This document shows, piece by piece, positions 4,235 to 61,231 of a DNA stretch of 64,000 nt (position 1 is its first letter; each line of letters begins with the position of its first letter). The DNA is taken from IMG/VR virus record IMGVR_UViG_3300020608_000013, positions 124,001-188,000 of that record, one strand, 5' to 3'. A program made the position numbers and the translations under genes. The notes beneath the pieces were generated by a model, which had not been told where the DNA came from, made no database searches, and saw nothing but the letters and a program-made list of their open reading frames with translations.

Positions 4235-4289
4235 AAAAAAAATAAACATTTTCTAGTACACTAACGAGCGAGAACGCTCGTTAGTGTAC
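4235..4289 (-). terminator. Hairpin (15-bp stem 4256-4289), 13-nt gap, then T8 on the minus strand
   Basis: gtacactaacgagcg-agaa-cgctcgttagtgtac; A-run 4235-4242 on the + strand. Confidence 0.7.
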
Positions 4290-4310
4290 CGTACTCAATT
4301 TATCAAGCCA

Positions 4311-4832
4311 TTAACCTTTAACGCTATAAGTCGTTTTAACCTCCCCACCACTTAAAGTGATGCATTCATCTTGCTTTTCTAGGTATACTTCATTACATTC
4401 AATCATGGAGAGGAATGTCCTAAAGTAATTAGCAACTACATTCAACCCGCTACTACACCCATTGATAAAATCAATTTTCCTACGAGTAGAAGTGTCTAGA
4501 CCATTCTGATCATGTATGAATTCACTAGGCTCTGTTAAGAAGATTTTATTTTCTGTCCAGTCAGTAGGGTAGCAAACATCGTTTTCATTAAAAAGTAGCA
4601 CGCGGGTCTCGCATCCTTTATGGTGTGATACACAAAAGACCATACTACCACAACCCACAAGCGGTGTAAAAAAGCACAGCTCGTAAGGACTTTTAAAACA
4701 ACTCGTTGTTAGAACTCTGTTGTTCAGAAGGTTTCTTGCATTGATGTAATACTTCACATTTAGTAATGTGGTTTGTGTTAGGAGTATGGTGTTATTGAAG
4801 TAATCGCTATTTCTCATACATATCGCCCCCAC
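4311..4832 (-). CDS. Hypothetical protein
   Basis: 173-aa ORF abutting its neighbour (shared base 4832); no recognisable motif. Confidence 0.7.
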   Translation of the reverse strand: MGAICMRNSDYFNNTILLTQTTLLNVKYYINARNLLNNRVLTTSCFKSPYELCFFTPLVGCGSMVFCVSHHKGCETRVLLFNENDVCYPTDWTENKIFLTEPSEFIHDQNGLDTSTRRKIDFINGCSSGLNVVANYFRTFLSMIECNEVYLEKQDECITLSGGEVKTTYSVKG

Positions 4833-5383
4833 TAATTAGATAGGGTTAATACGTTAGTTTCTGTTAGTAGAACGGATTTATTTTTAATTATCCGTACGAA
4901 GGCTTGTTCATTCATTTGACTGAACACCCAGTTTATGTGGTCAGGGGATTGATTTACACTATTTGGTATTAGGGTCTTCAGGACGCTTGCGTATCGCAAG
5001 ATGGGGGGTATTGCAGCATATGCTTGTTGTATAACAGGTACTAATGGAGGAAGCGTGCTGTCTAACGTGTTAGCGATATTAGACGTTAACAACCGTTCGT
5101 TAAAAACAACTCTTTTCATTTTAGGCGTGTATATGATAATATCTGTACTATCGCCCGCACTATCGGTAGTGTAATAGAAACGCTCACCATGTAACGTACT
5201 GGATAGAATAGTCTTTTTTCTTAGGTTAGGCATCACACCTTTCTCAAAAACTTCCTTTACTAACACAGGCGTTACCCGTAATGGTCTTAGCGGCTCTACA
5301 TTTATGCTAGATTGTTTTGTTTCCATGTTTGTTTTCCTCGAGTTAAAATTGGGAAGAAATGTGCTATTTACAAAATAGCACAT
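4832..5383 (-). CDS. Hypothetical protein (true start may be the internal METKQ)
   Basis: 183-aa ORF in a tightly packed minus-strand operon. Confidence 0.7.
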   Translation of the reverse strand: MCYFVNSTFLPNFNSRKTNMETKQSSINVEPLRPLRVTPVLVKEVFEKGVMPNLRKKTILSSTLHGERFYYTTDSAGDSTDIIIYTPKMKRVVFNERLLTSNIANTLDSTLPPLVPVIQQAYAAIPPILRYASVLKTLIPNSVNQSPDHINWVFSQMNEQAFVRIIKNKSVLLTETNVLTLSN

Positions 5384-5401
5384 TATTTAAAGAAAGTTGT
5401 T

Positions 5402-6004
5402 TTAAAATTGACCTGGTGTTATCAGACCCACATCGCCCCTTTTTAAAAAAGAGCGGCTTCGGCTTGACGCTCTTATGTAGAGGTAGCACCTTTTATCCAG
5501 CGCAGGATGTTGTTTAATACTTTTTACCGTATAAACTGTTTTCTCACCTTTCTCAACAAAGACCTTTTCTTCATCAGTGGTTGTGATCTCACTACATAAA
5601 GTTGCTGTGTGGTAAATACACCATTTTGCCAATAAGGTGTGTTTTGTCGATAAGATGGTTTCTTCATGGTCTATGTGGTTTTCACCACGTTCCCTTACTA
5701 AGCCTCCGTCGACAAACCGTCTATAGTCACGAGCAAATAAGATTGGTCCATATTGTGCAATCTCTTTAAGATTTTTGTCAAAAAGGTAGATTGCTAGTTT
5801 ATTACCTAAATGGTGCGTCACCCCAAAGTAATCCTTGTTAAAGGTATGGACAATGACTTTCTCCCCCGTGTGTAGGTCCTTTGGCGGAGGTATGTCGTAA
5901 TAATGGTCGAGTAACCTTATGTTGTGCAAGGACCTAGCATCGTGTATTATTAATTCATCATAAGACCTGAATAATTTTTCAATCAAGATTTGGAAAATTG
6001 TCAT
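5402..6004 (-). CDS. Hypothetical protein
   Basis: 200-aa ORF with stop/start coupling to the upstream gene at 6004. Confidence 0.75.
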   Translation of the reverse strand: MTIFQILIEKLFRSYDELIIHDARSLHNIRLLDHYYDIPPPKDLHTGEKVIVHTFNKDYFGVTHHLGNKLAIYLFDKNLKEIAQYGPILFARDYRRFVDGGLVRERGENHIDHEETILSTKHTLLAKWCIYHTATLCSEITTTDEEKVFVEKGEKTVYTVKSIKQHPALDKRCYLYIRASSRSRSFLKRGDVGLITPGQF

Positions 6005-6615
6005 TATATCGTCGCATAGGTGAATTGCCCGTGCTTAATACGAGCAGGGACATTGTTTATGAACTCATTGACACTCGACCCAACAACCCGAGTGTCGTCG
6101 TTTAACTGTATAGTTAGTTTAGGACTAACATCATAAAGAGCCTCTATATTAACAAGCTCTCTACCACGTAGGTCTAGGAGTCTTAGGTTTTTGTAGGCGG
6201 TCAGTGTTCGACAGTCTATTTGCGCGTCAGGGTACGCGCTATTTAAGTAGAGCTGTTTTAGGCGGGGTGCGCCACCTATAATCGATAACCCTTGTACGTT
6301 AGAAGCATATAAAACCTCTAAATAAGGTAGTCTATATAAGACCACGACATCATCGTGGATGGGCCTTGAAATATCGAGTATGACTAGTTCTCTAAAGTCG
6401 CTTAAAAAGCTATAGTCTTTTATAAACGCACCTTCAAGGGTAATACCTTTAACGGTGTCATACCACTCTTGTGTTAGTTTATCGACGAAAACTTCTACAT
6501 TCACGGCATTTGTTAAATTGACAAATGGGGTTGGTTTTGGTAGGCGAGATTTTTGGTTTAAGGTCTGTACGTATGTTGTATTTCTATGTTTGAAAACATC
6601 GGGGGTGTTGAACAT
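6004..6615 (-). CDS. Leucine-rich-repeat protein
   Basis: Recurrent LxxLxL units: FRELVILDIS, LPYLEVLYASN, APRLKQLYLNS, YKNLRLLDLRGRELVNIEAL. Confidence 0.75.
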   Translation of the reverse strand: MFNTPDVFKHRNTTYVQTLNQKSRLPKPTPFVNLTNAVNVEVFVDKLTQEWYDTVKGITLEGAFIKDYSFLSDFRELVILDISRPIHDDVVVLYRLPYLEVLYASNVQGLSIIGGAPRLKQLYLNSAYPDAQIDCRTLTAYKNLRLLDLRGRELVNIEALYDVSPKLTIQLNDDTRVVGSSVNEFINNVPARIKHGQFTYATI

Positions 6616-6638
6616 TACATATCTCCGTTTTTGAGTTT

Positions 6639-7378: not shown

Positions 7379-7386
7379 ATAATATA
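7379..7386 (-). promoter_or_regulatory. Putative early (virion-RNAP) promoter core TATATTAT
   Basis: One of eight intergenic copies; one base from the phiKZ early promoter consensus TATATTAC; 36 nt upstream of the LRR gene start at 7343. Confidence 0.65.
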
Positions 7387-7414: not shown

Positions 7415-10400
7415 GTGTCGTTAATGAGTGACAATGAACTACACCAACTCGATAGTAATGAAGAAGATCGTATGTTGGACGATCTGTTCAATGACGACTA
7501 CGATCCACAAGGTTTTGACAAAGGGTCGAGAGACCCAATACAAAGTTTTTATAAAGGGACACGTAAAGAACTAAAAGAGACATTTACAGACTCTTCAAAA
7601 ATTGAAGATTTATTAGAAAAAACCCTACCCGACGAATACGCAGAAGCGTTGAGCGTTTTTAACTCAACAACAAGTGCGATAGAAGATGTCGTTGACGCTT
7701 CTAAAAACGATTTCCGCTATAAAGCGAAAGAGATATTAACCTCAACCGAAAAGATATTGCCCAATAAAGCTACCTCACTTAAAGAGAGAATTAGTAAACT
7801 CAACGAGTCCATCACTATCGATGATGAAGATGATGGACCAATAGGGATCAGTGAGGAAGAGGAGTTAAAACAGCGCCGTAAAGAAGAGTTAAGTAGTGCT
7901 TTGGCGAAACTGGCGCGTAAGGAAGAAAATCGTGATATAGTTACGAGCGCTGCTACTTCAGCATCTGTCGATAACCTAACCTTATCGACGGTTAAAGGTA
8001 ATCAAGCGATACTAACCGCACTGTCTGCGTTAAGTCGTAGTACTGAACGCACGGCTAGTTTTCACGAACAGATTACAAATAGCTACTACCGCAAATCACT
8101 AGAACTCCAATACCGCCAATTATTTACCCAGATCGATACCTATAAACTGTCAAGAAGCCACTTTAAAGAAATTGAACTTATTATGAATAAAGTTCAACAT
8201 AATACTGGCTTACCAGAGTTTAAGAAAATTACTCAATCAGAGCGGTTTGCTGAATTGTCTCAAACGAAGTTCATGATGGCTGCACAAGATTCCTTGTTCG
8301 GTAATGCAGAGTTTATAAAGAAGGGGATAGAGAATCTTAAAGATAAACTAGGTAGTAAGATAGATACTATCAAGAATACGGCTTCCTTAGTTGCTCAAGG
8401 TAAAGAAGCTATTGGTGACGAAGACCCTTATGAAGAAGCGGGTAAATCGTTCTCTAAATCATTAGGTGTTGTGCTCGGCAAGCTCTTTAAAGGACCTACA
8501 GAAGAAGAACGTCTCGAAGCTTTGCGCGATAGAGCTGAGCGTGAAGACCCTACTTCTATATGGGGTAAACTTTATCGGAAAGTGACGGATGAGTACCATA
8601 AGCGTAATGATGTGTTTGAAGAGAACACGAGTGAGCTTAGAGCAAGGGTTCGCGAGATCGGTCAGGAACTTGGTCGCAATACTGCTAGTTTAGAAGACGT
8701 ATTAAACCGCACAGCCTCCTCGGAAAGATTAGAGGATAGTATGGGTGATGGGTTTGCCAAACGTTTTGGTAAGGCGGCTGCTCGTAATATACTTAGCGCT
8801 TTCGGGGAAGCGACGGATGTCAATTTTGAAGATCGTGATATTGAAGATGAGTTTGGTGCATTCGCTAAACGAGATAAAACGACATTAAACCAAGTAATCC
8901 CCACTTTACTTTCTAAAATATACGATGTAACTCGCGCTATACATGAGGGTAGCGATCAAGTTACTGAAACAGTTTACGATCGAAGAGATGGTAAAATTAA
9001 GTCAAGGGAGGCGCGTGGCGCTGAAGTACGTGAGCGGTTTACAGGTGAGGCGGTAGCAAGTTCTTACCGTGGTGCGCTAGAAGAACTCCATAAGAAAATA
9101 GATGATCTTGGTGATTTTGATGAGGTAACAAGTAAGGAAGTAAAACGTAAGTTAAGCGAGATTGGGTTTAACGATGTACTGTCTAACGGTCTAAGTGCGG
9201 TTAATATCGATACGTTACTTAATGAAAAGTTTTATACACCTGAAGAAGAAGACCTGTCAAATAAAATACGTGAGGTTTTAAAAGATCGGTTAGATGATGA
9301 TAAAAAGTTAAAAGGGGAACTTAATGATGAGTTAATACGGTTAAGGAAGAACATCCGTGACGTTAGGGGGGAGATGGATGAGTATAGGCTTGAGTACGGT
9401 AGCGATGGTCTGGTTGACTCTGGGTTAATTACTGTCGATAGTAACGGCTCGCAAAGTTTAAACTTAGACGCTTATCGGCGCTACCTACTGGGTGAGTCAG
9501 TACTACAATCAACAGAAAGTGAGCGTAGTGAGGACACATCTACAAGAGAGGAAACACGCGAACACGATCCAGAGCGTAGTCAACGATCTGTTGTGGACTA
9601 CACTACACTACTAACATCTATCGACCAGTCTTTAACTGTCTTGACAGGGCGATCTGTTACAGACTATAGTAGTCCGTTAACTACCCTGAACGACACTGTT
9701 AAGACGATAGCTGAAAAACCTACGCCTGACTATACTGATGCGTTTACACGGATTACAGAATTACTCGAAGAGGTTAGTCGTAAACAACCGATCGATTATT
9801 CAGATAAATTAGATTCAACAAACGCGTTATTGACACGCCTCTACGAACGCCCTACACCATCATTAACCGAAAGTTTAAGCGAAACCAACGCGTTACTTGA
9901 GTCGCAAGTGAGTCGTCCCGACTACGACTACAGTTACCATAAACAAACGAATAAGTTACTTAGTGGGATAAAAGAACAACTTAGTAATAATGGGACAGAT
10001 TTACAACCAATACTAGATGGTATGGCTAGCCACCGTGATAGCCTCATAGAGACGCATACGTTACTACACGACAAGCAACTTGAGGTTCAAGGTAGTTTAC
10101 AGTCGGTTGTTAGGGAAATGGGCGAGACGTTACTAGACTGTTGTCAAGAACAGTTGAATCGTCTGGGTACATCGAAGTCACAACCTACCGTGGAAGAGAC
10201 TTATGATACTACTTCAGTTGAAACAGGTGATTACAAACCTATCGATCTTGTAGAGCTGCTTTCAAAACGACCTGAAGAAATAGACCCCGAATTATTGAAA
10301 CGTATTGACGAACAGCGTTATGAGTTAGTAGAGGAAACTTATACAGACGGGAATGAGAAAGTCAAGGGGAGTTTAATTGAGAGTAAACTCCCTGCTGGGT

Positions 10401-13400
10401 ATGACCTTATTTATAAAGCAGGTTCGTTTACCGTAGGTAAGGTTGCAGGTAAAACGGTTAGTGCGATATATCGTCCCCGTGATGTCTATAAGAAGGGTTC
10501 TCCCTACCCAGCGATGACTGCGGTAGATATGCGAAACGGTCTTTATAGAGACCGTGAAAGTGGTGAGGTCATTAACACTTTACGGGACATTAAAGGCGAT
10601 GTAGTAAATACAGATGGTGATCTAGTATTAACGGATACCGATATTCGTAACGGACTTTACGATAAGAACGCTCGCCGTATAACACTACCTTTCTCAACAC
10701 TAATGCGGATTAGTCGTCGACTAGCTGGGTTTGTTGGTAAAGGAGTTGGGCGCTCTACTTCTTTATTATGGAATGTCGCAACCTTTAGTCCGTTAAGACG
10801 TAGACGCGATAGAACACGACCTAATGTGGAAGGCGTTGAGGGCGATAATGGTAGTCTTCGTAGAGGGCAAGTAAACGCGCCAAGAGTTGTTGAGGTCAAT
10901 GACCCAACAATCGATAAAATCCCTACAAAATTGGATAAGCTCATCAATGTCATTAAAGAACGTATACCTGATCCAAGACGAGCGTTTAATGACCATGATG
11001 GTGATGGTGTGCGTGAGGGGTCATGGCGTAACCTATTTAAGAGGAAAGAACGTCGTGAAGAAAGTGGTCGCGGCGACGTGACGAATATCACCACGACTGA
11101 AGAGAAGAAGGGTAAGGGTTGGTTGCTTTCCCTGTTAGGTGGTGCAGGGGTTGCTACACTAATTGGTCTTAAAAAGATCAAAGAGTTCTTCTCTGGTAGT
11201 TTAATGGATATGCTTAAAGGCGTGACTGAAGTTGCTACTAAGAGTGTCACTACTGTCGGAGGCGGTATATTAAAATTACTCGTGCCCGCAGGTGCAACGG
11301 CAGCAGCCGTAGGTTTAGGTCAACGCCTCATTAACTCAATACGAGGGCTGGGTAATCGCACAAGTAATACTTATGACCAAGTTGCCAATAACGCACCGAG
11401 ACTACTTAACGCGCAAGGGATCGCAGGGAGCCTTAGTCGATTAGGCGCTAGTGTCATGGGTACTATCGGGGGTTGGTTAGGTCTTACAGGGGATAGTAAT
11501 GGTAATCGTTCAAATACACCAGCAGGTCAAAACCAAACGACACAAACGCAACCAAGTCAAACACCACAAAACCAAACAACTCAAGCGCTGAATGATGCGA
11601 GAGACACATTATCTAATGTCGAAAGACCATCGCAAGATGGGCGAAGAGGTGACGGACGAGATACTCGTGACAACCGCAATCCGTTGACGGAGGAGGATCA
11701 AGATCGTCGTGGGCGTGGTAGAGGTCGGGGTGGTTTACTACGAAGAGCGGGTCGTGGTCTTCTCAATTTCGGTAAATCCATGTTCGGGCTTAATGGTGGT
11801 ACAGGGATGGCTGCCAGCGCAGGTCGAGCGGCAGGTTTAGCACGCGCTGGGTTAATCGCTGGTAGTGTTATGTCGGGTGCAGGTGGGTTAGGTGCTGTTG
11901 TTGCGACAGCTAGTACTGTACTGGCCTCGCCTGTTGTACTAGGCGCTGCAACGTTAGCGGCTGTAGGTTATGGAGGGTATAAACTATACAAACATTTAAA
12001 CCGCAATAATGTGACAGGTTTTGATAAACTACGTTTACTACAATACGGTTATAGCGATGGGATGGAGGATCATTACTATACCGTATTACGTCTTGAAGAA
12101 GCCATGCAAGATAACTGCATTTCTTATAAAGATGGTGTGGCGACTATTGATGAGAAAACAGTACCTGTTGAAGAGATATTTGAAATTTTCGATATTCGGG
12201 CTTCAGATAGTACGTTAGTAGCACCTTTCTTGACATGGTTTGATAAACGGTTTAAACCTGTGTTCATCAGACACCTAACAGTGTTATATGGGTTAAATTC
12301 ATCGCTTAAGTTAAAAGAGATTGATAAACTTGGCGGTGATCAGAAATTGACTTATTTGAAGCGAGCGTTATTTGAGACTGGTCCTTACCACATTAATGTC
12401 TCACCGTTGCATTACTATAAAGAGCTTAGTGTTAAATGGGAACATGTTAAAGCACATGGCGAGTCATTGAAAACGCAGTTGAGTAATGAGGATGAGAAAC
12501 AGAGTCCTGGAACGGGACCTGGTAGCGCTTCTACAACCATCAAGGAAGGAGAGAAAGAACAAGTTGCTGATGTCTATAGTAAGGAGAAAGATGAAGGTGG
12601 GCAGAATGTGCCAAAAGGTGTTGATAAACTCATTGCTATGCCGCCCGCACCAGAAGGTTTGTTTAAAGGTATTGATGCGTCTAACGCACAACCACGTATG
12701 CCTGATAAACCTGTTGGAGTACCTTACATCGACCAATCCTTCCAAGGGAAGAGTGAAGCCTATGTACCCGCATCTAGCGGACATGAAAACTACTTAACTT
12801 ATCGTGTACACAGCCCACAGCAAACAGCGAGTAGTCAGCCATTACCCGAAGCTCCAGCGACTAAAGGGTATACAGTAGTAGAAGCAAAGGCTGAGGATGT
12901 ACCGCAAGAGAACTACACGCTTAATACAAATGTCGCACCGACTAAAAAGAACATGCTTGAGATTATTCGTAAAGCTGCGCTTAAAGTTGGTGGTGTTGAC
13001 CCAACCTTCGCTCAAACAGTCGCGGCTATTGAGTCATCATTAAACCCTAAAGCGAAGGCTAAAACAACTTCAGCCTCTGGACTATTCCAGTTTGTTAAAG
13101 ATACATGGTTCGAGCAAGTCAAGAAACACGGGAAGAAGTACGGGATAACTAATCGTACCAATCGCTTTGATCCAATGGCTAACTCGCTATTAGGTGTTGA
13201 GTACATCAAGTCTAACTTAGCTGCCCTTAAAAAGGTTAAAAGTAGCCCTAATGCGACCGACGCTTATCTAGCGCATTTCTTAGGTGCTGGTGGTGCGCGT
13301 ACTTTACTACGACACTTAGCGAAGAACCCGAACACTAAAGGTAATGCGATCTTATCCAGAGCTGCTAAATCGAACAAGTCTATTTTCTACAAGAAGGGTA

Positions 13401-15115
13401 GAGCGAGAACAGTTCAGGAAATCTACGACTTAATGACAAATAAGGTTAAGAAGAGAGCGGCTGAGTATGGTATACCTTTTAACGCTTCGGGTGGTATAAC
13501 TAGAAGTGGTTCTAGTGATGGAGAGTCTACTAAAGGGGAAGTTGTTAAGTCCTCACCTGTAATGGACGTGACGTTCAATAAAGATGGTGTATCGCCGCCT
13601 ACCCCATTACCTGCAAATGGTGGGTTGACAGGCGCTGGTGGTAGTGCTAATACGCAAGGGGGTGTTCCTACAACACCTGCTAGTTTTATGGGAACGAGTC
13701 AGCAAACGTTCGGTACAAATAGCGCGACTACGCCAAATGTAGAAGGTAGTGGCTCAGCAGATAAACTATTTGGCGGCGGCGCAGACTCTCCTGAAATAAC
13801 GGGTAAGGGTGACGGTGGTGGTACACAAGGTAGCAGTGTTGTTGGTCACGGCGGGGCGTTGAAAGACGGCTCTGGTGGTATGAAATACATCAAGAAGCAA
13901 CGTTCTAGTATACGTTTCAAAGGACTCAACCCTCAGCTCTGGAAACAATTTCTTGGGATGGCTGAAGAGTATGGTGAGAAGACGGGTAAATCGATTCAAG
14001 TTAACGATGGTTTCCGTACTCGCGCAATGCAAGAGGCGTTGTTTAAGAAATATGGTCCAGGACGAGCTGCTAAGCCAGGACATTCTCGACACGAGACAGG
14101 GTTAGCTATAGACATCCAAAGTGCTACTGCGGCTAAACTTGAAAAGCTTGGTCTTATGAAGAAGTATGGGTTCACCAGACCTGTAGGTCAAGAACCTTGG
14201 CATTTAGAACCCGCAGGTATACAGCTTGACCCTAAAAGGTCTAAAAGTGACCCTGAATATGCAAGTAAGATGATTGCAGCCTCCGCAGGGCGTGGCGGTG
14301 GTGGTTATGGGATGAAGAAAAATGCTCGTAAATACGGTCGTGATGTAAGTTTGGCAAAATCCCTATTCGAGGCAGGCACGCCGATTAAACCTTCAAAACC
14401 AGCGTCACCGACTAACCTCGACAAGACAGAGAAGACTGCACTGAACAAGGCAGGTATTACACCACCCAAACCTGCTATAGGGGGTGGAGGCGAAGCGCCC
14501 TCTAAAGATCAGACGATGGCTAAACTCGCGGAAGCGAACAAAGTTGTTACAGGAGGGACAACAACAAGTGGTGTTGAATATGGTAGAGACGGTAAACCCT
14601 TACCACCACTACCACCTGGCACGGTTAAAACAAACAACCCTTGGCCAATGCCATCAGCAACTAAAGCTGCGCCGACACCAGCGCCTATAGTTGCCACCCC
14701 ACCTGTTATTGATAACCTTTCTAATAGTGACGCGGTAGCAAGTGTGGATAGTGAGCCTAAACCTAAGTCTACGCCTACAACAGTGCCAAAACAAAACAGT
14801 AATGTACAATCTGTACTTAGTGGGTTGAACCCTTATCAATCAAAAGAGTTTTCACCAACGGCTGAAATTGGTACGAATACAGCAAACATGGCCAAGACGC
14901 TTAGTTCGTCAGATGTCACGCTTAGAGAGATAAAGAGTCTGTTGAATCAATACCTTAAACAAAACAAACCTTTGAATACGGGGGATAAAGTTGAAGAACT
15001 TAAGCAAGAGGAGAGTATTGTTAAACCATTACAATCTAAAAACCCTACTAGTGTACCGTTACCTACCATAACGGAATCAAAACCTTTGCCAGTAAATATG
15101 GAAAGATCGATATAA
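7415..15115 (+). CDS. Tape-measure/tail-associated lysin (phiKZ gp181-like) with lytic transglycosylase and M15 peptidase domains
   Basis: 2566 aa, next to the gp180- and gp182-like genes. SLT motif AAIESSLNPKAKAKTTSASGLFQFVKDTW (~12950-13470). M15/VanY-like GFRT..Q..L...AAKPGHSRHETGLAIDI...EPWHLE (~13910-14215). Hydrophobic Gly/Ala-rich central segments. Confidence 0.9.
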   Translation: MSLMSDNELHQLDSNEEDRMLDDLFNDDYDPQGFDKGSRDPIQSFYKGTRKELKETFTDSSKIEDLLEKTLPDEYAEALSVFNSTTSAIEDVVDASKNDFRYKAKEILTSTEKILPNKATSLKERISKLNESITIDDEDDGPIGISEEEELKQRRKEELSSALAKLARKEENRDIVTSAATSASVDNLTLSTVKGNQAILTALSALSRSTERTASFHEQITNSYYRKSLELQYRQLFTQIDTYKLSRSHFKEIELIMNKVQHNTGLPEFKKITQSERFAELSQTKFMMAAQDSLFGNAEFIKKGIENLKDKLGSKIDTIKNTASLVAQGKEAIGDEDPYEEAGKSFSKSLGVVLGKLFKGPTEEERLEALRDRAEREDPTSIWGKLYRKVTDEYHKRNDVFEENTSELRARVREIGQELGRNTASLEDVLNRTASSERLEDSMGDGFAKRFGKAAARNILSAFGEATDVNFEDRDIEDEFGAFAKRDKTTLNQVIPTLLSKIYDVTRAIHEGSDQVTETVYDRRDGKIKSREARGAEVRERFTGEAVASSYRGALEELHKKIDDLGDFDEVTSKEVKRKLSEIGFNDVLSNGLSAVNIDTLLNEKFYTPEEEDLSNKIREVLKDRLDDDKKLKGELNDELIRLRKNIRDVRGEMDEYRLEYGSDGLVDSGLITVDSNGSQSLNLDAYRRYLLGESVLQSTESERSEDTSTREETREHDPERSQRSVVDYTTLLTSIDQSLTVLTGRSVTDYSSPLTTLNDTVKTIAEKPTPDYTDAFTRITELLEEVSRKQPIDYSDKLDSTNALLTRLYERPTPSLTESLSETNALLESQVSRPDYDYSYHKQTNKLLSGIKEQLSNNGTDLQPILDGMASHRDSLIETHTLLHDKQLEVQGSLQSVVREMGETLLDCCQEQLNRLGTSKSQPTVEETYDTTSVETGDYKPIDLVELLSKRPEEIDPELLKRIDEQRYELVEETYTDGNEKVKGSLIESKLPAGYDLIYKAGSFTVGKVAGKTVSAIYRPRDVYKKGSPYPAMTAVDMRNGLYRDRESGEVINTLRDIKGDVVNTDGDLVLTDTDIRNGLYDKNARRITLPFSTLMRISRRLAGFVGKGVGRSTSLLWNVATFSPLRRRRDRTRPNVEGVEGDNGSLRRGQVNAPRVVEVNDPTIDKIPTKLDKLINVIKERIPDPRRAFNDHDGDGVREGSWRNLFKRKERREESGRGDVTNITTTEEKKGKGWLLSLLGGAGVATLIGLKKIKEFFSGSLMDMLKGVTEVATKSVTTVGGGILKLLVPAGATAAAVGLGQRLINSIRGLGNRTSNTYDQVANNAPRLLNAQGIAGSLSRLGASVMGTIGGWLGLTGDSNGNRSNTPAGQNQTTQTQPSQTPQNQTTQALNDARDTLSNVERPSQDGRRGDGRDTRDNRNPLTEEDQDRRGRGRGRGGLLRRAGRGLLNFGKSMFGLNGGTGMAASAGRAAGLARAGLIAGSVMSGAGGLGAVVATASTVLASPVVLGAATLAAVGYGGYKLYKHLNRNNVTGFDKLRLLQYGYSDGMEDHYYTVLRLEEAMQDNCISYKDGVATIDEKTVPVEEIFEIFDIRASDSTLVAPFLTWFDKRFKPVFIRHLTVLYGLNSSLKLKEIDKLGGDQKLTYLKRALFETGPYHINVSPLHYYKELSVKWEHVKAHGESLKTQLSNEDEKQSPGTGPGSASTTIKEGEKEQVADVYSKEKDEGGQNVPKGVDKLIAMPPAPEGLFKGIDASNAQPRMPDKPVGVPYIDQSFQGKSEAYVPASSGHENYLTYRVHSPQQTASSQPLPEAPATKGYTVVEAKAEDVPQENYTLNTNVAPTKKNMLEIIRKAALKVGGVDPTFAQTVAAIESSLNPKAKAKTTSASGLFQFVKDTWFEQVKKHGKKYGITNRTNRFDPMANSLLGVEYIKSNLAALKKVKSSPNATDAYLAHFLGAGGARTLLRHLAKNPNTKGNAILSRAAKSNKSIFYKKGRARTVQEIYDLMTNKVKKRAAEYGIPFNASGGITRSGSSDGESTKGEVVKSSPVMDVTFNKDGVSPPTPLPANGGLTGAGGSANTQGGVPTTPASFMGTSQQTFGTNSATTPNVEGSGSADKLFGGGADSPEITGKGDGGGTQGSSVVGHGGALKDGSGGMKYIKKQRSSIRFKGLNPQLWKQFLGMAEEYGEKTGKSIQVNDGFRTRAMQEALFKKYGPGRAAKPGHSRHETGLAIDIQSATAAKLEKLGLMKKYGFTRPVGQEPWHLEPAGIQLDPKRSKSDPEYASKMIAASAGRGGGGYGMKKNARKYGRDVSLAKSLFEAGTPIKPSKPASPTNLDKTEKTALNKAGITPPKPAIGGGGEAPSKDQTMAKLAEANKVVTGGTTTSGVEYGRDGKPLPPLPPGTVKTNNPWPMPSATKAAPTPAPIVATPPVIDNLSNSDAVASVDSEPKPKSTPTTVPKQNSNVQSVLSGLNPYQSKEFSPTAEIGTNTANMAKTLSSSDVTLREIKSLLNQYLKQNKPLNTGDKVEELKQEESIVKPLQSKNPTSVPLPTITESKPLPVNMERSI
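9596..9991 (+). repeat. Five to six tandem 22-aa (66-nt) degenerate repeats inside the gp181-like protein
   Basis: DYTTLLTSIDQSLTVLTGRSVT / DYSSPLTTLNDTVKTIAEKPTP / DYTDAFTRITELLEEVSRKQPI / DYSDKLDSTNALLTRLYERPTP / SLTESLSETNALLESQVSRPDY / DYSYHKQTNKLL... Confidence 0.8.
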
Positions 15116-18335: not shown

Positions 18336-18393
18336 AAAAAATAAATGAATAGAAAGTACACTCACTTAATGCACGTAGCATTAAGTGAGTGTA
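18336..18393 (-). terminator. Hairpin (16-bp stem 18357-18393), 15-nt gap, then T6
   Basis: tacactcacttaatgc-acgta-gcattaagtgagtgta; A-run 18336-18341. Confidence 0.65.
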
Positions 18394-19707: not shown

Positions 19708-20094
19708 ATGGCTAACACTGAAGAACGACTAGATAAGAACGCTCAACTAAGAGACCTTTTAATCGACGAACTTTCTGCAACGGAAGATCAGCGTAAGGAG
19801 TTTGTTAATGAACTAGCACGACTACTTAAAGATTCGGACTCGCAGGCCATTAACATGAAAAGGTTGTTAATTGAGGAGCGCCAGAGTGATAACATTGCTG
19901 AAATTGCCGCAGAGTTAATGAAGAACATCAATCCTGATCGCTATAGAGCGAAGAAAGCGGTATGTGATAACCCAAGTAAAGACACTGTTATTGAGGACGA
20001 GGGTTTTGTTTCCGTGGATGGTGAGTTTGAACAAGGGTGTCAGTTACTAACAATGGATATTCTTAAAGAAGGTGATGAGGACAAACCTTCATAA
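19708..20094 (+). CDS. Hypothetical helical protein
   Basis: 128 aa, AGGAG SD upstream. Confidence 0.8.
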   Translation: MANTEERLDKNAQLRDLLIDELSATEDQRKEFVNELARLLKDSDSQAINMKRLLIEERQSDNIAEIAAELMKNINPDRYRAKKAVCDNPSKDTVIEDEGFVSVDGEFEQGCQLLTMDILKEGDEDKPS

Positions 20095-20119: not shown

Positions 20120-20176
20120 AAAAAATAGATAGTGACGAGACAGCTACCTATGCTTTTATTAGCATAGGTAGCTGTC
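20120..20176 (-). terminator. Hairpin (16-bp stem 20139-20176), 13-nt gap, then T6; between convergent genes
   Basis: gacagctacctatgct-tttatt-agcataggtagctgtc; A-run 20120-20125. Confidence 0.7.
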
Positions 20177-24174: not shown

Positions 24175-24963
24175 ATGAAAGTAAGTGATTTTACAGACGA
24201 TGATTACCGTATTCTAGACGTAAGGGTAGGTAACGAGTCTTTGTTTAGCGTTTACGATGCTGTTGCCGATAAAATAGGTAACTATCTATTAGGGGCGATA
24301 CAAGATTTTGGCGAGTTCATCCATAAGCCACAAGCGGAGATTTATACAATACCTCATCGTGATTTTAAAAAGTTGAGAGATAAAATACTAGCATCTTCTT
24401 ACCACGAGTTATCAGAATTGACTATAGATGTACCCGCAGGGTTTGAAGGGAATATCTACCAATACGGCCATTACTTAAGAACATCGCTCACAACGAACCG
24501 TAGCGCTATTGAAGAGGTTTTAGGGTATACTAGACCTTATCTGGCTAAAAGCCTCAATGAGACTAATACAGGGTCAACTAGACCCATTATAAAATACTTA
24601 CTCGATTACAAAGAAACGCGAACCTCTCATAAAGAGACGATTGAGACCTACTTCAATCGTTCACATGAGTTAACCCGTCGTAAATTTGGCGATGTGTTCA
24701 ATACTAAGCAAGAAATGGTCGATTTCTTTGAGGCGTTTAAATCAACTGAAGTCGATGTTAAAGAATTGGCAAAAGTGCAAACTTCAGTGCGAGAGCTTAG
24801 TCTGTATCTGAACAAAGTGGTGGAGCGCTCAACGGATATTGATCGTAAAACACTAGCCACACTAGGTCAAGCAGTCTATCAGATCGCGAAGGGGGTTGAA
24901 GAGTATAGTGTCTTAAACTACCGCGCAGGCGAGTTGTTCAATACGGTAAAAAAATTAACTTAA
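24175..24963 (+). CDS. Putative virion structural protein (phiKZ gp153-like)
   Basis: Divergent from uvsX as in phiKZ-like phages; helical, with FGDVFN and YQIAKGVEEYSVLNYR motifs. Confidence 0.55.
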   Translation: MKVSDFTDDDYRILDVRVGNESLFSVYDAVADKIGNYLLGAIQDFGEFIHKPQAEIYTIPHRDFKKLRDKILASSYHELSELTIDVPAGFEGNIYQYGHYLRTSLTTNRSAIEEVLGYTRPYLAKSLNETNTGSTRPIIKYLLDYKETRTSHKETIETYFNRSHELTRRKFGDVFNTKQEMVDFFEAFKSTEVDVKELAKVQTSVRELSLYLNKVVERSTDIDRKTLATLGQAVYQIAKGVEEYSVLNYRAGELFNTVKKLT

Positions 24964-24967
24964 CAAG

Positions 24968-25008
24968 TAACACAACACTACCAGTTTTCTTCTGGTAGTG
25001 TTGTGTTA
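24968..25008. terminator. 17-bp stem hairpin between convergent genes
   Basis: taacacaacactaccag-ttttctt-ctggtagtgttgtgtta. Confidence 0.65.
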
Positions 25009-25012
25009 TTCA

Positions 25013-26945: not shown

Positions 26946-26983
26946 AAAAAAAAAATAGGTTAGCCCGAAGACTAACCTATTTT
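26946..26983 (-). terminator. Intrinsic terminator (canonical spacing), T10
   Basis: Minus strand aaaataggttagtcttcgggctaaccTATTTTTTTTTT. Confidence 0.8.
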
Positions 26984-28995: not shown

Positions 28996-29051
28996 AAAAA
29001 AATACAAACAATAGTTCTGTATACGGGTCAATACCCGTATACAGAACTATT
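28996..29051 (-). terminator. Hairpin (19-bp stem 29010-29051), 7-nt gap, then T7
   Basis: aatagttctgtatacgggt-caat-acccgtatacagaactatt; ends the tail-fibre operon. Confidence 0.75.
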
Positions 29052-34471: not shown

Positions 34472-34918
34472 ATGATCGAAATGATTGTCGCCCATACCCC
34501 CAACCGAGTAATAGGTTCTAACGGACACCTCCCTTGGAAAAATAAAAACGATATGGTTTGGTTTAAAAAGCATACCGTTGGTAAAGCTATCGTAATGGGT
34601 CGTAATACATATGACTCGATAGGTAGACCTTTACCAAAACGACGTAATATTGTTGTTTCTCGTACTTTAGAGATAGGGAGAATAAACAATATTATGGTTG
34701 CTAGAACACCACCTTTGGAAGGTAATTACATGGTCATTGGCGGTGCTGCGATATATGAGCACTATTTACCCTATGCAGATATACTTTATCGCACAATACT
34801 CCATAAAGAGTATGGAGGTGACACTTACTTCCCAGTAATCGATGAAAAGTTGTTCAAAATCGTTTTTGCGTCTACTGATAGTGACGCAACTTACCAAATA
34901 CTTGAGAGAAAAAAATAA
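34472..34918 (+). CDS. folA: Dihydrofolate reductase
   Basis: IVAHTPNRVIGSNGHLPW, DMVWFK, VMGRNTYDSIGRPLPKRRNIVVSR, VIGGAAIY, GDTYFP. Confidence 0.97.
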   Translation: MIEMIVAHTPNRVIGSNGHLPWKNKNDMVWFKKHTVGKAIVMGRNTYDSIGRPLPKRRNIVVSRTLEIGRINNIMVARTPPLEGNYMVIGGAAIYEHYLPYADILYRTILHKEYGGDTYFPVIDEKLFKIVFASTDSDATYQILERKK

Positions 34919-34967
34919 ACGACAAAGGTTATACACGTTACTATAGCTTAAGCTATAGTAACGTGTA
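34909..34967 (-). terminator. 36-bp perfect palindrome (34932-34967), 16-nt gap, then T7 on the minus strand; between convergent genes
   Basis: tacacgttactatagctt/aagctatagtaacgtgta; A-run 34909-34915. Confidence 0.7.
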
Positions 34968-34972
34968 ACGCC

Positions 34973-39229: not shown

Positions 39230-39291
39230 TTTCTTTTCCTTAATGATTTAGGTTAAAGTTACTGAGCTACGCACTATGGTAACTCAACATT

Positions 39292-39299
39292 ATAATATA
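39292..39299 (-). promoter_or_regulatory. Putative early promoter core TATATTAT
   Basis: Extended similarity with the 41998 copy (aaattaatacaggcgTATATTATaatgttgag vs aaatttatacaggtgTATATTATagtgttgag). Confidence 0.75.
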
Positions 39300-39332
39300 C
39301 GCCTGTATTAATTTATATTAAAACACTTTTTC

Positions 39333-39389
39333 AAAAAAAAATAAACTAGAGTAATATAGACCAAGTTGGGCAACCCAACTTGGTCTATA
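39333..39389 (-). terminator. Hairpin (16-bp stem 39355-39389), 13-nt gap, then T9
   Basis: tatagaccaagttggg-caa-cccaacttggtctata. Confidence 0.75.
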
Positions 39390-39399
39390 CCTTCTATCA

Positions 39400-39788
39400 A
39401 CCTGCGTAAATTCTAATTGTGTCGAATTCGACATAATTAAAACATCGTCATACATACTTTTTAAACAAATCGACGTTCTTAAAGTTAATTAATTCAACTA
39501 TCTTTCGTCAGGAGACGTATTTACTGAATAGCTGTTTTGTTTAACAGTTCAAGACGTTCTTGCTGTGGCGTACATTAAGCGTTTCTAGATTAGCAAAACA
39601 AGCCAGTTGCGAAACGTCTGCATACCACCGTAACGACCTACTCTACTTTGTATACCTATAGCGTTGGTAGCCTGAACCCATTCTTTAACGCTAATTATAT
39701 AGCTATTCAAACCTACAACACTTCTAATTCTATCGAATTCGATAGAATTAGAATTAGGGTTATAAATGCGTTCCCAAACGCCTTCTAC
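39400..39788 (-). pseudogene. Decayed KilA-N domain gene remnants (four fragments, frameshifted)
   Basis: 39624-39788 VEGVWERIYNPNSNSIEFDRIRSVVGLNSYIISVKEWVQATNAIGIQSRVGRYGG; 39574-39624 YADVSQLACFANLETLN; 39509-39565 QQERLELLNKTAIQ*IRLL; 39400-39441 FNYVEFDTIRIYAG. Confidence 0.75.
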
Positions 39789-41919: not shown

Positions 41920-41997
41920 AATATTTCTCTCATGTATTTGTAGGTATTCAGGTAACTACTGTTGTGGATTATTGAGCTAACGGTTTAGCTCAACACT

Positions 41998-42005
41998 ATA
42001 ATATA
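41998..42005 (-). promoter_or_regulatory. Putative early promoter core TATATTAT
   Basis: Followed by the hairpin ttgagctaa-accg-ttagctcaa. Confidence 0.75.
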
Positions 42006-42040: not shown

Positions 42041-42090
42041 AAAAAAAATACAGACACGTTGTACCCTAGAGAACACTCTCTAGGGTACAA
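42041..42090 (-). terminator. Hairpin (14-bp stem 42059-42090), 10-nt gap, then T8
   Basis: ttgtaccctagaga-acac-tctctagggtacaa. Confidence 0.75.
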
Positions 42091-42902: not shown

Positions 42903-42911
42903 TCGTGTTTA

Positions 42912-42953
42912 ATTAGAGGGTCTAGTGTGCTATAGCACACTAGACCCTCTAAT
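42912..42953. terminator. 42-bp perfect palindrome between co-oriented genes (no T-tract)
   Basis: attagagggtctagtgtgcta/tagcacactagaccctctaat. Confidence 0.5.
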
Positions 42954-42966
42954 AAGTTAATTAAGA

Positions 42967-45552: not shown

Positions 45553-45638
45553 AATATGTTCCTTTTGTTAATGGAGTAAGTGAGAGTAGTTTACTCCCAC
45601 TTTATTGACATTGTTGATATTTAACTACGGTAACTACC

Positions 45639-47592: not shown

Positions 47593-47645
47593 AAAAAAAA
47601 ATAGTATTTATAATATACGCTACTAACTTAGTTAGTAGCGTATAT
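47593..47645 (-). terminator. Hairpin (15-bp stem 47613-47645), 11-nt gap, then T9; the stem overlaps a TATATTAT motif
   Basis: atatacgctactaac-tta-gttagtagcgtatat. Confidence 0.7.
47610..47617 (-). promoter_or_regulatory. Putative early promoter core TATATTAT, partly within a terminator stem
   Basis: Motif match 37 nt upstream of the 47573 start. Confidence 0.5.
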
Positions 47646-47659
47646 TTCCTTCATTTCAT

Positions 47660-49770: not shown

Positions 49771-49793
49771 AGAGGTATAGTTTCTATACCTCT
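49771..49793 (-). terminator. 10-bp hairpin in intergenic gap
   Basis: agaggtatag-ttt-ctatacctct, no long T-tract. Confidence 0.4.
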
Positions 49794-51478: not shown

Positions 51479-51481
51479 GAT

Positions 51482-54013: not shown

Positions 54014-54047
54014 AAAAAAAAATAGGTGTTGGTCGCCAACCAACACC
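54014..54047 (-). terminator. Intrinsic terminator (near-canonical spacing), T9
   Basis: ggtgttggt-cgcca-accaacacc then TATTTTTTTTT on the minus strand. Confidence 0.8.
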
Positions 54048-55451: not shown

Positions 55452-55529
55452 TTGAGTTCTCCTTTATTTCTCACTATATTTACTTACACGGTATTTTATT
55501 ACCGTGTAAGCTGTTACAAAATATGTTGT

Positions 55530-58425: not shown

Positions 58426-58481
58426 AAAAAAATATTAAAACAGATTATGTATAGGAGGTAGTCTAACTACCTCCCATACAT
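58426..58481 (-). terminator. Hairpin (58447-58481, one mismatch), 14-nt gap, then T7
   Basis: atgtat-a-ggaggtag-tctaa-ctacctcc-c-atacat. Confidence 0.65.
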
Positions 58482-58486
58482 CCACG

Positions 58487-58902: not shown

Positions 58903-58918
58903 AATAACCTCTTATTAC

Positions 58919-59353: not shown

Positions 59354-59358
59354 ATTAT

Positions 59359-59808: not shown

Positions 59809-60611
59809 ACACTCCCCAGACCCTTTAACTTTTTACGTAAGATGCGCTCTCTTACAAAACTATATGGTGCTGTATAGAAAAATTTAAGTTTAGGCACTAG
59901 TCTTTCCTCTTTTAAATGAGCAACTAGGCTCTCTACAAGCACTTTTAAAAGTTTAGGGTTCGTTGTTTGGTACATAATAAGAGACATTTGTACACTCCCT
60001 TTATCAAGTGTACTTATTACGTCTTTTATTTCGGTATAAAAATGTAAAGACCCCCACGTAATATTTTTCTCCTTACACACCATGTAAAGTCTCAATGCGA
60101 ACAGAACGTAAGTAGTACGTGACTTAACCCCAAACTTACCATCAATGACTAACCTTGCTAGACTAACCGTATTCTCTTCCGTCATTGAGTTATCATGGCT
60201 CAATTCTGGTAAAGGGTGTGCGGCGGTAACTATTCGCCATTTTAGTAGCCCGTCTAACCATAACTCTCTCACAAGCGTTAATGGGTGTGTATAAGGTAGA
60301 TATGTAAACCCTAACAATTCTCTTGCTGTAAAAAAAACATGTGCGCCTGCAATGATGTACTTGTGGTCCATTTCAACATAACGCTGTAACCGCTCTTTAA
60401 CAACCTTATCTTTAACGTGATCAATCTCTCGCACTATTATATCTCTTATACGGTCCTCATTTACAGGGACAGTCTCCTTCTCTGTCATATTACTTAACTT
60501 TAAGTAAAATATTGTTAATTCATTACGGGCGCTCGTCCCATGCTGGTAGAATAATGTAGTGGACACCCAGTCCACTAAGTCTACTAATATTTTCTTATCT
60601 AGCTTACTCAT
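59805..60611 (-). CDS. Hypothetical protein
   Basis: 268 aa, coupled to the macrodomain gene (GTATGA overlap). Confidence 0.8.
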   Translation of the reverse strand: MSKLDKKILVDLVDWVSTTLFYQHGTSARNELTIFYLKLSNMTEKETVPVNEDRIRDIIVREIDHVKDKVVKERLQRYVEMDHKYIIAGAHVFFTARELLGFTYLPYTHPLTLVRELWLDGLLKWRIVTAAHPLPELSHDNSMTEENTVSLARLVIDGKFGVKSRTTYVLFALRLYMVCKEKNITWGSLHFYTEIKDVISTLDKGSVQMSLIMYQTTNPKLLKVLVESLVAHLKEERLVPKLKFFYTAPYSFVRERILRKKLKGLGSV

Positions 60612-60676
60612 TTTAAAATACCTTTTAGTATGAGACCATGTTCATATATGAACATGGTCGTGATTAAGCGCTTGTT

Positions 60677-61084
60677 TTAGAATTTAACCCCGTTAAATTC
60701 TCCATATAAAGCGAAGAAAGTAATATGTACTAGCATCTCTTTGATGCGAGATTTATACGCCTTTAGGAAATAGCGAATATCACTTCTTCTATTACGGACT
60801 GCATAGGCCTGCATATAAATACGACCCAATTCAACCATCGTGATCTGATCTTTCTTACACAAGATCAAAATCCTCGTGCGCTCGCAAGGGAGCGAGTTTA
60901 ACTTCTCTAATAGTTCGACGGCATCGTACGCCTCCCCCGTCACACTACATTCGTAATCTAGTACGAAAGCATGATTAAAAAAACCTGACAGGGTTTTCCG
61001 CGCTTCCACTCCTTTATTCCCATTTAGGATGTTTTTGAATTGAAGGAAGGTGTCATATTTTAATTGTTCACGACGTGTTGTCAT
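60677..61084 (-). CDS. Hypothetical protein
   Basis: 135 aa, GAGG SD, first gene after promoter 61139. Confidence 0.75.
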   Translation of the reverse strand: MTTRREQLKYDTFLQFKNILNGNKGVEARKTLSGFFNHAFVLDYECSVTGEAYDAVELLEKLNSLPCERTRILILCKKDQITMVELGRIYMQAYAVRNRRSDIRYFLKAYKSRIKEMLVHITFFALYGEFNGVKF

Positions 61085-61138
61085 CTTAATAACCTCTTAT
61101 AAATTTAAAGTATGGTATTATCCCTTAATACCATACTT

Positions 61139-61146
61139 ATAATATA
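61139..61146 (-). promoter_or_regulatory. Putative early promoter core TATATTAT
   Basis: Immediately followed by the hairpin aagtatggtatta-aggga-taataccatactt. Confidence 0.7.
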
Positions 61147-61175
61147 TGTTTATAATTAGCTATATTAACCCTTTT

Positions 61176-61231
61176 AAAAAAAAATATGATGCATTAGTTA
61201 GTATAAAGGTGGAAAACCACCTTTATACTAA
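61176..61231 (-). terminator. Hairpin (15-bp stem 61198-61231), 13-nt gap, then T9
   Basis: ttagtataaaggtgg-aaaa-ccacctttatactaa. Confidence 0.75.

What the first reader, a model, noticed from the sequence alone, without database searches (positions are those of the whole stretch)
4235..61231. Non-canonical terminator grammar: long hairpin, variable gap, invariant TA-T(6-10)
Seen: twelve minus-strand hairpins are followed by a T-run, and in 12/12 the run is preceded by TA. T-run positions: 4235, 18336, 20120, 26946, 28996, 34909, 39333, 42041, 47593, 54014, 58426, 61176. In ten the run is 7-16 nt from the stem (13, 15, 13, 7, 16, 13, 10, 11, 14, 13); only 26946 and 54014 are near-canonical. 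Established: bacterial intrinsic terminators need the U-tract right after the stem. Inference: the phage RNAP may terminate at a sequence-specific TAT(n) signal, with the long hairpin acting as a 3' stabiliser or nuclease block.
Basis: partly seen in the sequence, partly recalled or inferred. Interest (0 to 1): 0.7.

Follow-up and report, generated by a model that had tools for sequence, protein, structure and literature searches.

The report
Hairpin, gap, TA-oligo-T phage terminators
A giant phage that carries its own RNA polymerases ends its genes with a long hairpin, an unpaired gap of about 7-16 bases and then "TA" plus 6-10 T's; seven cultured relatives share this layout, so these enzymes may stop differently from bacterial ones.

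Summary
All 12 sites exist as described. The hairpin-to-T-run link is far above chance: 23 of 62 intergenic T6+ runs lie after a hairpin, against 4.9±2.1 on random placement. The gap is unpaired: there is no small hairpin next to the run and no pairing with the 5' flank.

"TA" is strongly enriched but not invariant. It precedes 22/35 hairpin-linked runs and 47/251 other runs (p=2e-7). Genome-wide, the base two before the run is T in 21/23 sites and the base before it is A in 17/23.

The genome is a 212-kb metagenomic phiKZ-like (chimallivirus) jumbo phage with its own split RNA polymerase genes. The same layout occurs in phiKZ, 201phi2-1, RP12, Wellington, SPN3US and two Vibrio phages: nearly every TA-T7+ sits 0-22 nt after a strong hairpin. 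The papers I read report only "hairpin + TTAT" for phiKZ terminators.

Best reading: these are leaky transcript-end modules for the phage polymerases. Whether RNA is released at the distal U-run is plausible but untested, because no RNA data exist.

Verdict: new variant of a known kind, interest about 0.55.

The parts
4235..4289 (-). Module 1. T8 at 4235-4242, TA at 4243-4244, 13-nt unpaired gap, 15-bp hairpin at 4256-4289. The RNA polymerase gene 2611-4218 starts 16 nt after the run.
18336..18393 (-). Module 2. T6, TA, 15-nt gap, 16-bp hairpin at 18357-18393. The ribosome-binding site and ATG follow within 10 nt of the run.
20120..20176 (-). Module 3. T6, TA, 13-nt gap, 16-bp hairpin at 20139-20176. 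The hairpin is shared with the convergent + gene 19708-20094, which has no T-run on its own side.
24948..25010 (-). AA-T7 at 24948-24954, 11-nt gap, 19-bp hairpin at 24966-25010. The T-run lies inside the 3' end of the convergent + gene 24175-24963. The loop at 24985-24991 is inverted in related strains.
26946..26983 (-). Module 4, canonical. T10 directly abuts a 12-bp hairpin at 26952-26983. The run is 2 nt shorter in three related strains.
28996..29051 (-). Module 5. T7, TA, 7-nt U-rich gap (GTTTGTA), 19-bp hairpin at 29010-29051. An early promoter lies 47 nt downstream.
34909..34967 (-). Module 6. T7, TA, 16-nt gap, 16-bp hairpin at 34932-34967. The T-run overlaps the stop region of the convergent + gene 34472-34918 (dihydrofolate reductase).
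39333..39389 (-). Module 7. T9, TA, 13-nt gap, 16-bp hairpin at 39355-39389. An early promoter lies 33 nt downstream.
42041..42090 (-). Module 8. T8, TA, 10-nt gap, 14-bp hairpin at 42059-42090. An early promoter lies 35 nt downstream. In relatives the loop is inverted, the run is 1-2 nt shorter, and one stem change keeps a G.U pair only in the minus-strand RNA.
47593..47646 (-). Module 9. T9, TA, 10-nt gap, 16-bp hairpin at 47612-47646. The next ATG is 19 nt after the run.
54014..54047 (-). Module 10, near-canonical. T9, then TA, then a 9-10-bp GC-rich hairpin at 54025-54047 (gap 2).
58426..58481 (-). Module 11. T7, TA, 14-nt gap (contains ATCTGTT), 16-bp hairpin at 58447-58481.
61176..61231 (-). 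Module 12. T9, TA, 13-nt gap, 15-bp hairpin at 61198-61231. An early promoter lies 29 nt downstream.
41998..42005 (-). Example of the early-promoter core TATATTAT, followed by a 5'UTR hairpin at 41970-41995. Other in-window copies have their high coordinate at 7386, 19675, 28948, 39299, 46606 and 61146.
2611..4218 (-). Phage RNA polymerase subunit gene (phrog_2986). The large-subunit gene downstream of it runs off the left end of the window.

Best explanation
The modules are transcript-end (terminator or attenuator) signals read by the phage's own non-canonical multisubunit RNA polymerases. They follow a layout shared across phiKZ-like (chimallivirus) jumbo phages: a strong RNA hairpin, an unpaired and often pyrimidine-rich spacer of about 5-20 nt, then T-(A>C,G)-T(6-12).

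Shown: the layout itself, its strand specificity, its statistical excess, its conservation in relatives, and the fact that the spacer is unpaired.

Inferred: the weak rU:dA hybrid of the distal U-run is where the polymerase pauses and, in a fraction of rounds, releases the RNA, as happens at oligo-T for archaeal RNA polymerase and RNA polymerase III. The hairpin has just left the RNA exit channel when the polymerase enters the run, because a 13-nt gap is close to the length of hybrid plus channel. It would block backtracking and later protect the trimmed 3' end from exonucleases.

Termination must be partial, because essential genes start 10-45 nt after the run without a promoter of their own.
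For: Position and orientation. In the window the modules punctuate the gene strand every 2-6 kb: 4 are followed by an early promoter, 7 by a start codon, and 2 lie at convergent gene ends.

Association and TA enrichment. The hairpin-to-run gap is bounded at 0-22 nt with a mode of 13. The distance from run to promoter is 7-74 nt and from run to ATG 10-45 nt, so the run belongs with the hairpin.

Strand specificity. None of the 17 plus-strand gene-block ends has a T6+ run on its own side, although 10 of them have hairpins, and shared hairpins carry the run on the minus-strand side only. At two convergent junctions the run is kept inside the opposite gene's coding end.

Relatives. Among the TA-T7+ sites examined, a hairpin lies within 0-22 nt upstream in phiKZ 12/12, RP12 9/10, Wellington 7/8, 201phi2-1 5/5 and SPN3US 12/13, and likewise in Vibrio phages sm033 and pVa-21. 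In those genomes the base two positions before a T7+ run is A or T (almost always T) in about 95% of runs.

Inside genes. TA-T7+ never occurs in the sense orientation within genes here (0/11 sense T7+ runs, against 9/24 antisense).

Related strains keep stems and runs while loops flip. One stem change stays paired only in the sense RNA.

phiKZ and 201phi2-1 terminators were mapped experimentally to such hairpins (PMC10914365, PMC11512511).
Against: No 3'-end data exist for this phage.

In phiKZ the published motif around mapped ends is the hairpin plus an adjacent TTAT, not a distal run. Only 18 TA-T7+ sites exist there, against 133 mapped ends (PMC10914365).

Plus-strand genes manage without a run.

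T-runs in genes are only mildly depleted (T7+ 10 against 21 expected), and A-runs are depleted more, so avoidance is not specific.

In 201phi2-1 the spacer pairs with the 5' flank, which gives an ordinary geometry there.

The count of 0/11 sense TA-T7+ is not significant against the codon-shuffle expectation of about 1.
Confidence: 0.55

Rival explanations
1. Termination happens at the hairpin, as at phiKZ hairpin+TTAT sites. The distal TA-T(n) is a second-line element: a pause or fail-safe stop for polymerases that read through, or a brake that gives the hairpin time to act.
For: The published phiKZ and 201phi2-1 motif is centred on the hairpin and the adjacent TTAT (PMC10914365, PMC11512511). 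Many hairpins in this genome and at all plus-strand gene ends lack any run. Only a subset of phiKZ terminators has the run.
Against: In this genome the 8 nt after the stem are only about 45% T and lack TTAT, so hairpin-proximal release would have no U-tract at all. The bounded gap and the conserved T-A junction suggest one coupled unit.
Confidence: 0.22
2. This is an RNA processing and stability module rather than a terminator. A host RNase E-type enzyme cuts the single-stranded A/U tract, and the hairpin protects the upstream fragment, which sets different levels for genes of one operon. The sequence A-U|U-U-U fits the RN|WUU preference, which I cite from my own knowledge.
For: The spacer and run are single-stranded. 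Seven modules lie inside operons just before a ribosome-binding site and must be read through. All cultured phages with the layout infect proteobacteria.
Against: RNase E needs no run of 7-12 U. Four modules are followed by a promoter and two lie at convergent ends, where no downstream fragment needs releasing. Hairpin-less TA-T7 sites sit just upstream of early promoters, as terminators would.
Confidence: 0.1
3. The T-run is not part of the gene end. It serves the downstream unit as an AT-rich promoter-upstream element or a U-rich translation enhancer, or it is a DNA-level feature, and it merely sits next to terminator hairpins.
For: Some runs abut a promoter (gap 7-9 nt at genome 119373 and 25417) or a ribosome-binding site. 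In phage Wellington two runs directly precede an early-promoter-like sequence.
Against: Distances to promoters (7-74 nt) and to ATGs (10-45 nt) vary much more than the distance to the hairpin. Runs also occur at convergent gene ends, where nothing lies downstream.
Confidence: 0.08
4. The pattern is chance or base composition in an AT-rich genome, plus the reader's selection of cases.
Against: Random-placement control. Fisher test for TA. Recurrence in phages with GC 0.53-0.55. T4 control.
Confidence: 0.01

Closest known systems
phiKZ / 201phi2-1 terminator motif (hairpin followed by 5'-TTAT-3'; ONT-cappable-seq; PMC10914365, PMC11512511)
   Same: Same virus group, with phage-encoded multisubunit polymerases. 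A strong hairpin at gene ends is followed by a non-canonical, interrupted T-rich tail containing T-A-T. The very phiKZ and 201phi2-1 genomes also carry the distal TA-T7-10 after such hairpins.
   Different: Here the stems are long (12-19 bp), AT-richer and varied in sequence, not the conserved CCYCCCC/GGGRRGG. There is no TTAT next to the stem. The T-A-T junction lies 7-16 nt away and is followed by a long pure T-run. In 201phi2-1 the spacer is the lower half of an extended stem. Here it is unpaired.
Canonical bacterial intrinsic (Rho-independent) terminator
   Same: Hairpin plus T-run downstream of genes in the sense orientation. About a quarter of the modules (26946 and 54014 in the window; genome 51082, 90365, 119373, 198989) have the ordinary 0-2-nt gap.
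   Different: Most modules have 7-16 unpaired, non-U-rich nucleotides between stem and run. That is too far for the hairpin to reach the RNA:DNA hybrid when the polymerase is on the run.
Oligo-T termination by archaeal RNA polymerase, RNA polymerase III and large-DNA-virus polymerases (e.g. PMC8716108, PMC10965686; vaccinia U5NU from my own knowledge)
   Same: A run of at least 6-7 T on the non-template strand as the common element. A short specific context around it. The enzymes are divergent multisubunit polymerases.
   Different: Those signals need no upstream hairpin. Here 16 of 23 TA-T7+ sites genome-wide, and 10 of 10 in the window, have one at a bounded distance.
Hairpin-stabilised pause sites (his/trp leader type) and the backtracking model for RNA polymerase III termination (my own knowledge)
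   Same: A hairpin about 11-13 nt behind the RNA 3' end acts from the exit channel. The modal gap of 13 puts the T-A step at that distance.
   Different: The gap ranges from 5 to 17. No G(-10)/Y(-1)/G(+1) pause consensus is present in this genome.
T7 RNA polymerase class II (sequence-specific) terminator ATCTGTT + U-run (my own knowledge)
   Same: Idea of a sequence-specific stop without an adjacent hairpin. One spacer (58426) contains ATCTGTT.
   Different: That signal belongs to a single-subunit polymerase. The heptamer is present in only 1 of 13 modules.

Membership tests
Canonical intrinsic terminator | Stable RNA hairpin downstream of a gene, in the sense orientation | tested here: met
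   Stems of 9-19 bp, folding energy -19 to -32 kcal/mol for the 70 nt upstream of the run
Canonical intrinsic terminator | U-tract of 7-9 nt immediately (0-2 nt) after the stem | tested here: not met
Only 26946 and 54014 comply.
Canonical intrinsic terminator | No alternative small or extended hairpin that brings the stem next to the run | tested here: met
   There is no abutting small hairpin, except at genome 30552. Flank-spacer pairing is no better than with shuffled spacers. The gap is therefore genuine.
phiKZ-type terminator (hairpin + TTAT) | Host genome is a chimallivirus-like phage with split multisubunit RNA polymerase genes | tested here: met
   phrog_2986 at E 7.5e-136. 310 jumbo-phage hits at 30-36% identity. 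Adjacent 1343-aa large-subunit gene and the same gene order next to a giant lysin-domain protein. A search with the phiKZ shell protein found nothing, which is uninformative at this distance.
phiKZ-type terminator (hairpin + TTAT) | Conserved GC-rich stem CCYCCCC...GGGRRGG | tested here: not met
   The stems are all different and AT-rich. 8 of 20 end in GTRTA/TATAC/GTACA instead.
phiKZ-type terminator (hairpin + TTAT) | TTAT directly after the stem | tested here: not met
   The first 8 nt after the stems lack TTAT. T-T-A-T is found at the distal junction instead.
phiKZ-type terminator (hairpin + TTAT) | RNA 3' ends map at the element | not testable with these tools
   No RNA run holds this phage.
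Oligo-T (hairpin-independent) termination | T-run of at least 6 on the sense strand at gene ends, rare inside genes | tested here: inconclusive
   Intergenic enrichment is strong (8-mer T8: 24 of 30 copies are intergenic). Depletion inside genes is modest and not specific. TA-T7+ is 0/11 in sense coding sequence.
Oligo-T (hairpin-independent) termination | Works without upstream RNA structure | tested here: inconclusive
   7 of 23 TA-T7+ sites on the minus strand lack a hairpin, and 3 of these lie 53-65 nt upstream of early promoters. All 10 in the window have one.

The most novel reading that the evidence does not exclude
The non-canonical multisubunit RNA polymerases of chimalliviruses terminate by a mechanism of their own. 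Release occurs at a short sequence-specific signal, T-A-T(6-12). The RNA hairpin acts at a distance, as a backtracking block, pause stabiliser or 3'-end protector, rather than by invading the hybrid. Published 3'-end maps that place ends at the hairpin base would then show trimmed ends, not release sites.
Probability: 0.3. Interest if true: 0.8.

Novelty: new variant of a known kind. Interest (0 to 1): 0.55.

Why it matters
How the two host-independent RNA polymerases of nucleus-forming jumbo phages stop transcription has not been worked out biochemically, as far as the papers I could search show. A conserved layout of hairpin, unpaired gap and TA-oligo-T, present from Pseudomonas phage phiKZ to an uncultured hydrothermal-biofilm phage, gives a concrete hypothesis. 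It can be tested with templates in vitro and by re-reading existing phiKZ and 201phi2-1 3'-end data.

It also matters for annotation. Standard terminator predictors require the U-tract next to the stem and will miss or misplace most of these sites. It further matters for using jumbo-phage parts as insulators in synthetic biology.

Tried and rejected
- **Near relatives for covariation.** A nucleotide search of phage records found nothing, and IMG/VR had no related loci. Protein homologues reach only 36% identity. Only four or five metagenome runs hold strains about 4-5% different. Read laying lists at most about 40 differences, so just two hairpins could be read fully.
- **RNA evidence.** No RNA run holds the window. 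Run X10 is of unknown kind and behaves like DNA.
- **Hidden small hairpin next to the run.** Rejected.
- **Spacer as the lower half of an extended stem.** Rejected for this genome (z +0.28). True for 201phi2-1 and for some phiKZ sites.
- **T-run as a fixed part of the early promoter.** Rejected, because the distances are 7-74 nt. The two plus-strand "spaced" hits are minus-strand early promoters with 5'UTR hairpins read backwards.
- **Specific avoidance of T-runs in genes.** Only modest, and weaker than for A-runs.
- **Temporal class of flanking genes.** 17 of 20 neighbouring proteins have no PHROG match.
- **Supplementary tables with phiKZ and 201phi2-1 3'-end coordinates.** Not held.
- **T4 as a gap control.** Too few qualifying sites. 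It was useful only for the count of TA-T7.


Full report
**What the window is.** The window is bases 124001-188000 of a single 212,020-bp contig. IMG/VR classes the contig as a virus record with direct terminal repeats. It comes from a biofilm, marine or hydrothermal metagenome. GC is about 0.385.

A rough gene call gives 197 genes, 170 of them on the minus strand, with 91% of the sequence coding. ORF 2611-4218(-) is a jumbo-phage RNA polymerase subunit (phrog_2986, E 7.5e-136). It matches 310 phiKZ-like phages at only 30-36% identity. A 1343-aa large-subunit gene follows it. The pair lies near a 2566-aa protein with SLT and VanY domains, as in Vibrio, Ralstonia and Erwinia chimalliviruses, although five small genes lie between here where the relatives have none. 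The nearest homologue in the protein database I searched is 36% identical. This is therefore a deep-branching, uncultured chimallivirus-like phage, and like its relatives it is expected to transcribe with its own polymerases.

**The observation.** All twelve sites are present. An unbiased scan for hairpins of at least 10 bp, followed by a search for T-runs, recovers all of them.

Genome-wide there are about 30 such modules, almost all on the minus strand. The gap has two modes: 0-2 nt (canonical, about a quarter of modules) and 5-17 nt (mode 13).
- Hairpin linkage of intergenic T6+ runs is 23 of 62, against 4.9±2.1 on random intergenic placement.
- TA precedes 22/35 linked runs and 47/251 others (p=1.7e-7).
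- In the spaced class, the base two before the run is T in 21/23 and the base before it is A in 17/23.
- In the window, every TA-T7+ on the minus strand (10/10) is a hairpin module. Six of the seven non-TA T7+ runs are ordinary coding runs.

TA is thus a strong preference, not an invariant.

**Is the gap real?** Yes. There is no small hairpin abutting the run, except at genome 30552. Pairing between the 5' flank and the spacer is no better than with shuffled spacers (mean z +0.28). The first 8 nt after the stems are only about 45% T, so they are not a U-tract.

**Context.** The second signal enriched in intergenic DNA is an early-promoter-like motif, TATATTAT-A-NNN-TG, followed by a 5'UTR hairpin. 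It has 30 minus-strand copies, 23 of them outside gene calls. This matches the AT-rich early promoters of phiKZ-like phages (PMC10914365, PMC11512511).

Of the 13 window modules:
- 4 are followed by such a promoter at 29-47 nt;
- 7 are followed by a start codon at 10-45 nt;
- 2 lie at convergent gene ends.

The distance from run to promoter or ATG varies far more than the distance from run to hairpin. The run therefore belongs to the hairpin. Genes such as the polymerase subunit at 2611-4218 start 16 nt after a run, so these stops must be leaky.

None of the 17 plus-strand gene blocks ends with a T6+ run, although 10 end in strong hairpins. Where a hairpin is shared by convergent genes, only the minus-strand side carries the run, twice at the cost of placing it inside the other gene's coding end.

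**Relatives.** Strains that differ by about 4-5%, found in other metagenomes, keep the stems and runs. Two loops are exactly inverted (24985-24991 and 42073-42076). Two runs differ in length by 1-2 nt. One stem substitution (42062) gives G.U in the minus-strand RNA but C.A in the plus-strand RNA. This is thin but consistent evidence for function in the sense RNA.

More telling is that the layout is family-wide. Among the TA-T7+ sites examined, a strong hairpin lies 0-22 nt upstream in:
- phiKZ, 12/12;
- Ralstonia phage RP12 (GC 0.55), 9/10;
- Erwinia phage Wellington (GC 0.53), 7/8;
- 201phi2-1, 5/5;
- SPN3US, 12/13;
- Vibrio phages sm033 and pVa-21, likewise.

In four of these genomes (RP12, Wellington, sm033, pVa-21) the base two positions before a T7+ run is A or T (almost always T) in about 95% of runs, and the base before the run is A or C. 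There are two classes: stems ending in C followed directly by the run, and stem-spacer-TA-run. T4, at similar GC, has a single TATTTTTTT.

In 201phi2-1 and a few phiKZ sites the spacer pairs with a conserved upstream CATAA(AG) flank. That restores an ordinary geometry with a two-tier stem, as the 201phi2-1 paper noted for its A/B motif pair (PMC11512511). This is not the case in the present phage, RP12, Wellington or SPN3US.

**Literature.** ONT-cappable-seq of phiKZ found 133 termination regions and a conserved hairpin followed by 5'-TTAT-3'. 201phi2-1 gave 132, with a similar motif. In the library I could search I found no description of a distal TA-oligo-T element or of a gap rule.

**Interpretation.** The modules are transcript-end signals for the phage polymerases. 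That much is well supported by position, orientation, strand asymmetry and conservation.

The claim that release happens at the distal run is inference. It rests on three points: the generally weak rU:dA hybrid, the lack of any U-tract next to the stem, and a bounded gap close to the length of RNA held by a multisubunit polymerase. Against it stand the published placement of the phiKZ motif at the stem, the run-less hairpins at plus-strand gene ends, and the absence of specific avoidance of T-runs inside genes.

The rivals are:
- hairpin-proximal termination with the run as a second-line stop;
- an RNase E-type processing and stabiliser module;
- a role for the run in the downstream unit.

Chance is excluded.

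**Verdict.** The pattern is real and significant. It is a variant of the chimallivirus terminator that does not fit the canonical rule, and it is conserved well beyond this genome.

Noticed in passing
window 24985-24991 and 42073-42076: The loops of two terminator hairpins are exact reverse complements in related strains (TTTTCTT to AAGAAAA; ACAC to GTGT), while the stems are unchanged. This is flip-flop inversion of long palindromes.
   Followed up: partly
window ~39285-41989: In contigs of three related samples, the sequence left of 41989 continues as the sequence left of about 39285. The 2.7-kb cassette between the two near-identical early promoters (two genes, terminator 39333, promoter 39299) is therefore absent there. 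Terminator-promoter modules appear to bound gene cassettes.
   Followed up: partly
window 7386, 19675, 28948, 39299, 42005, 46606, 61146 (minus strand) and 23 more copies in the genome: Early-promoter-like motif TATATTAT-A-NNN-TG, usually followed at once by a 10-13-bp 5'UTR hairpin.
   Followed up: partly
3' arms of hairpins at window 4256, 18357, 34932, 42059, 47612, 58447, 61198 and genome 191148: 8 of 20 spaced-terminator stems end in GTRTA, TATAC or GTACA (several are TACAC...GTGTA). Only 3 of 64 other hairpins do. I chose the pattern after looking, so the p-value is inflated.
   Followed up: partly
genome 102112, 97821, 91737 (outside the window): Hairpin-less TAGTATTTTTTTAC lies 53-65 nt upstream of three early promoters. 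'TA-T7-AC' also occurs at window 28996, 58426 and 24948.
   Followed up: no
window 42910-42955, 45578-45602, 49771-49793, 55483-55510, 61951-61982, 62558-62586: Strong hairpins between genes, 20-35 nt upstream of start codons, with no T-run. They form a second class of hairpin of unknown role.
   Followed up: no
window 7415-15115 (+): A 2566-aa protein with lytic transglycosylase (SLT) and VanY peptidase domains. It is the counterpart of the giant 'tail fiber/lytic transglycosylase' gene next to the polymerase genes in other chimalliviruses.
   Followed up: partly
genome ends (1-141 and 211880-212020), outside the window: The same sequence context occurs at genome 76 and 211955, and IMG/VR flags direct terminal repeats. 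This is probably an assembly overlap of a circularly permuted genome. CheckV completeness is given as 78%.
   Followed up: no
genome about 93-96 kb (outside the window): All 13 G7+ words on the minus strand are intergenic, within unusually long non-coding stretches of up to 2.3 kb.
   Followed up: no
window 34968-34985 (+): After the shared hairpin, the plus-strand side reads CGCCTTATTCTGT. This fits the published phiKZ tail YTTATKYYGT, downstream of the dihydrofolate reductase gene.
   Followed up: no
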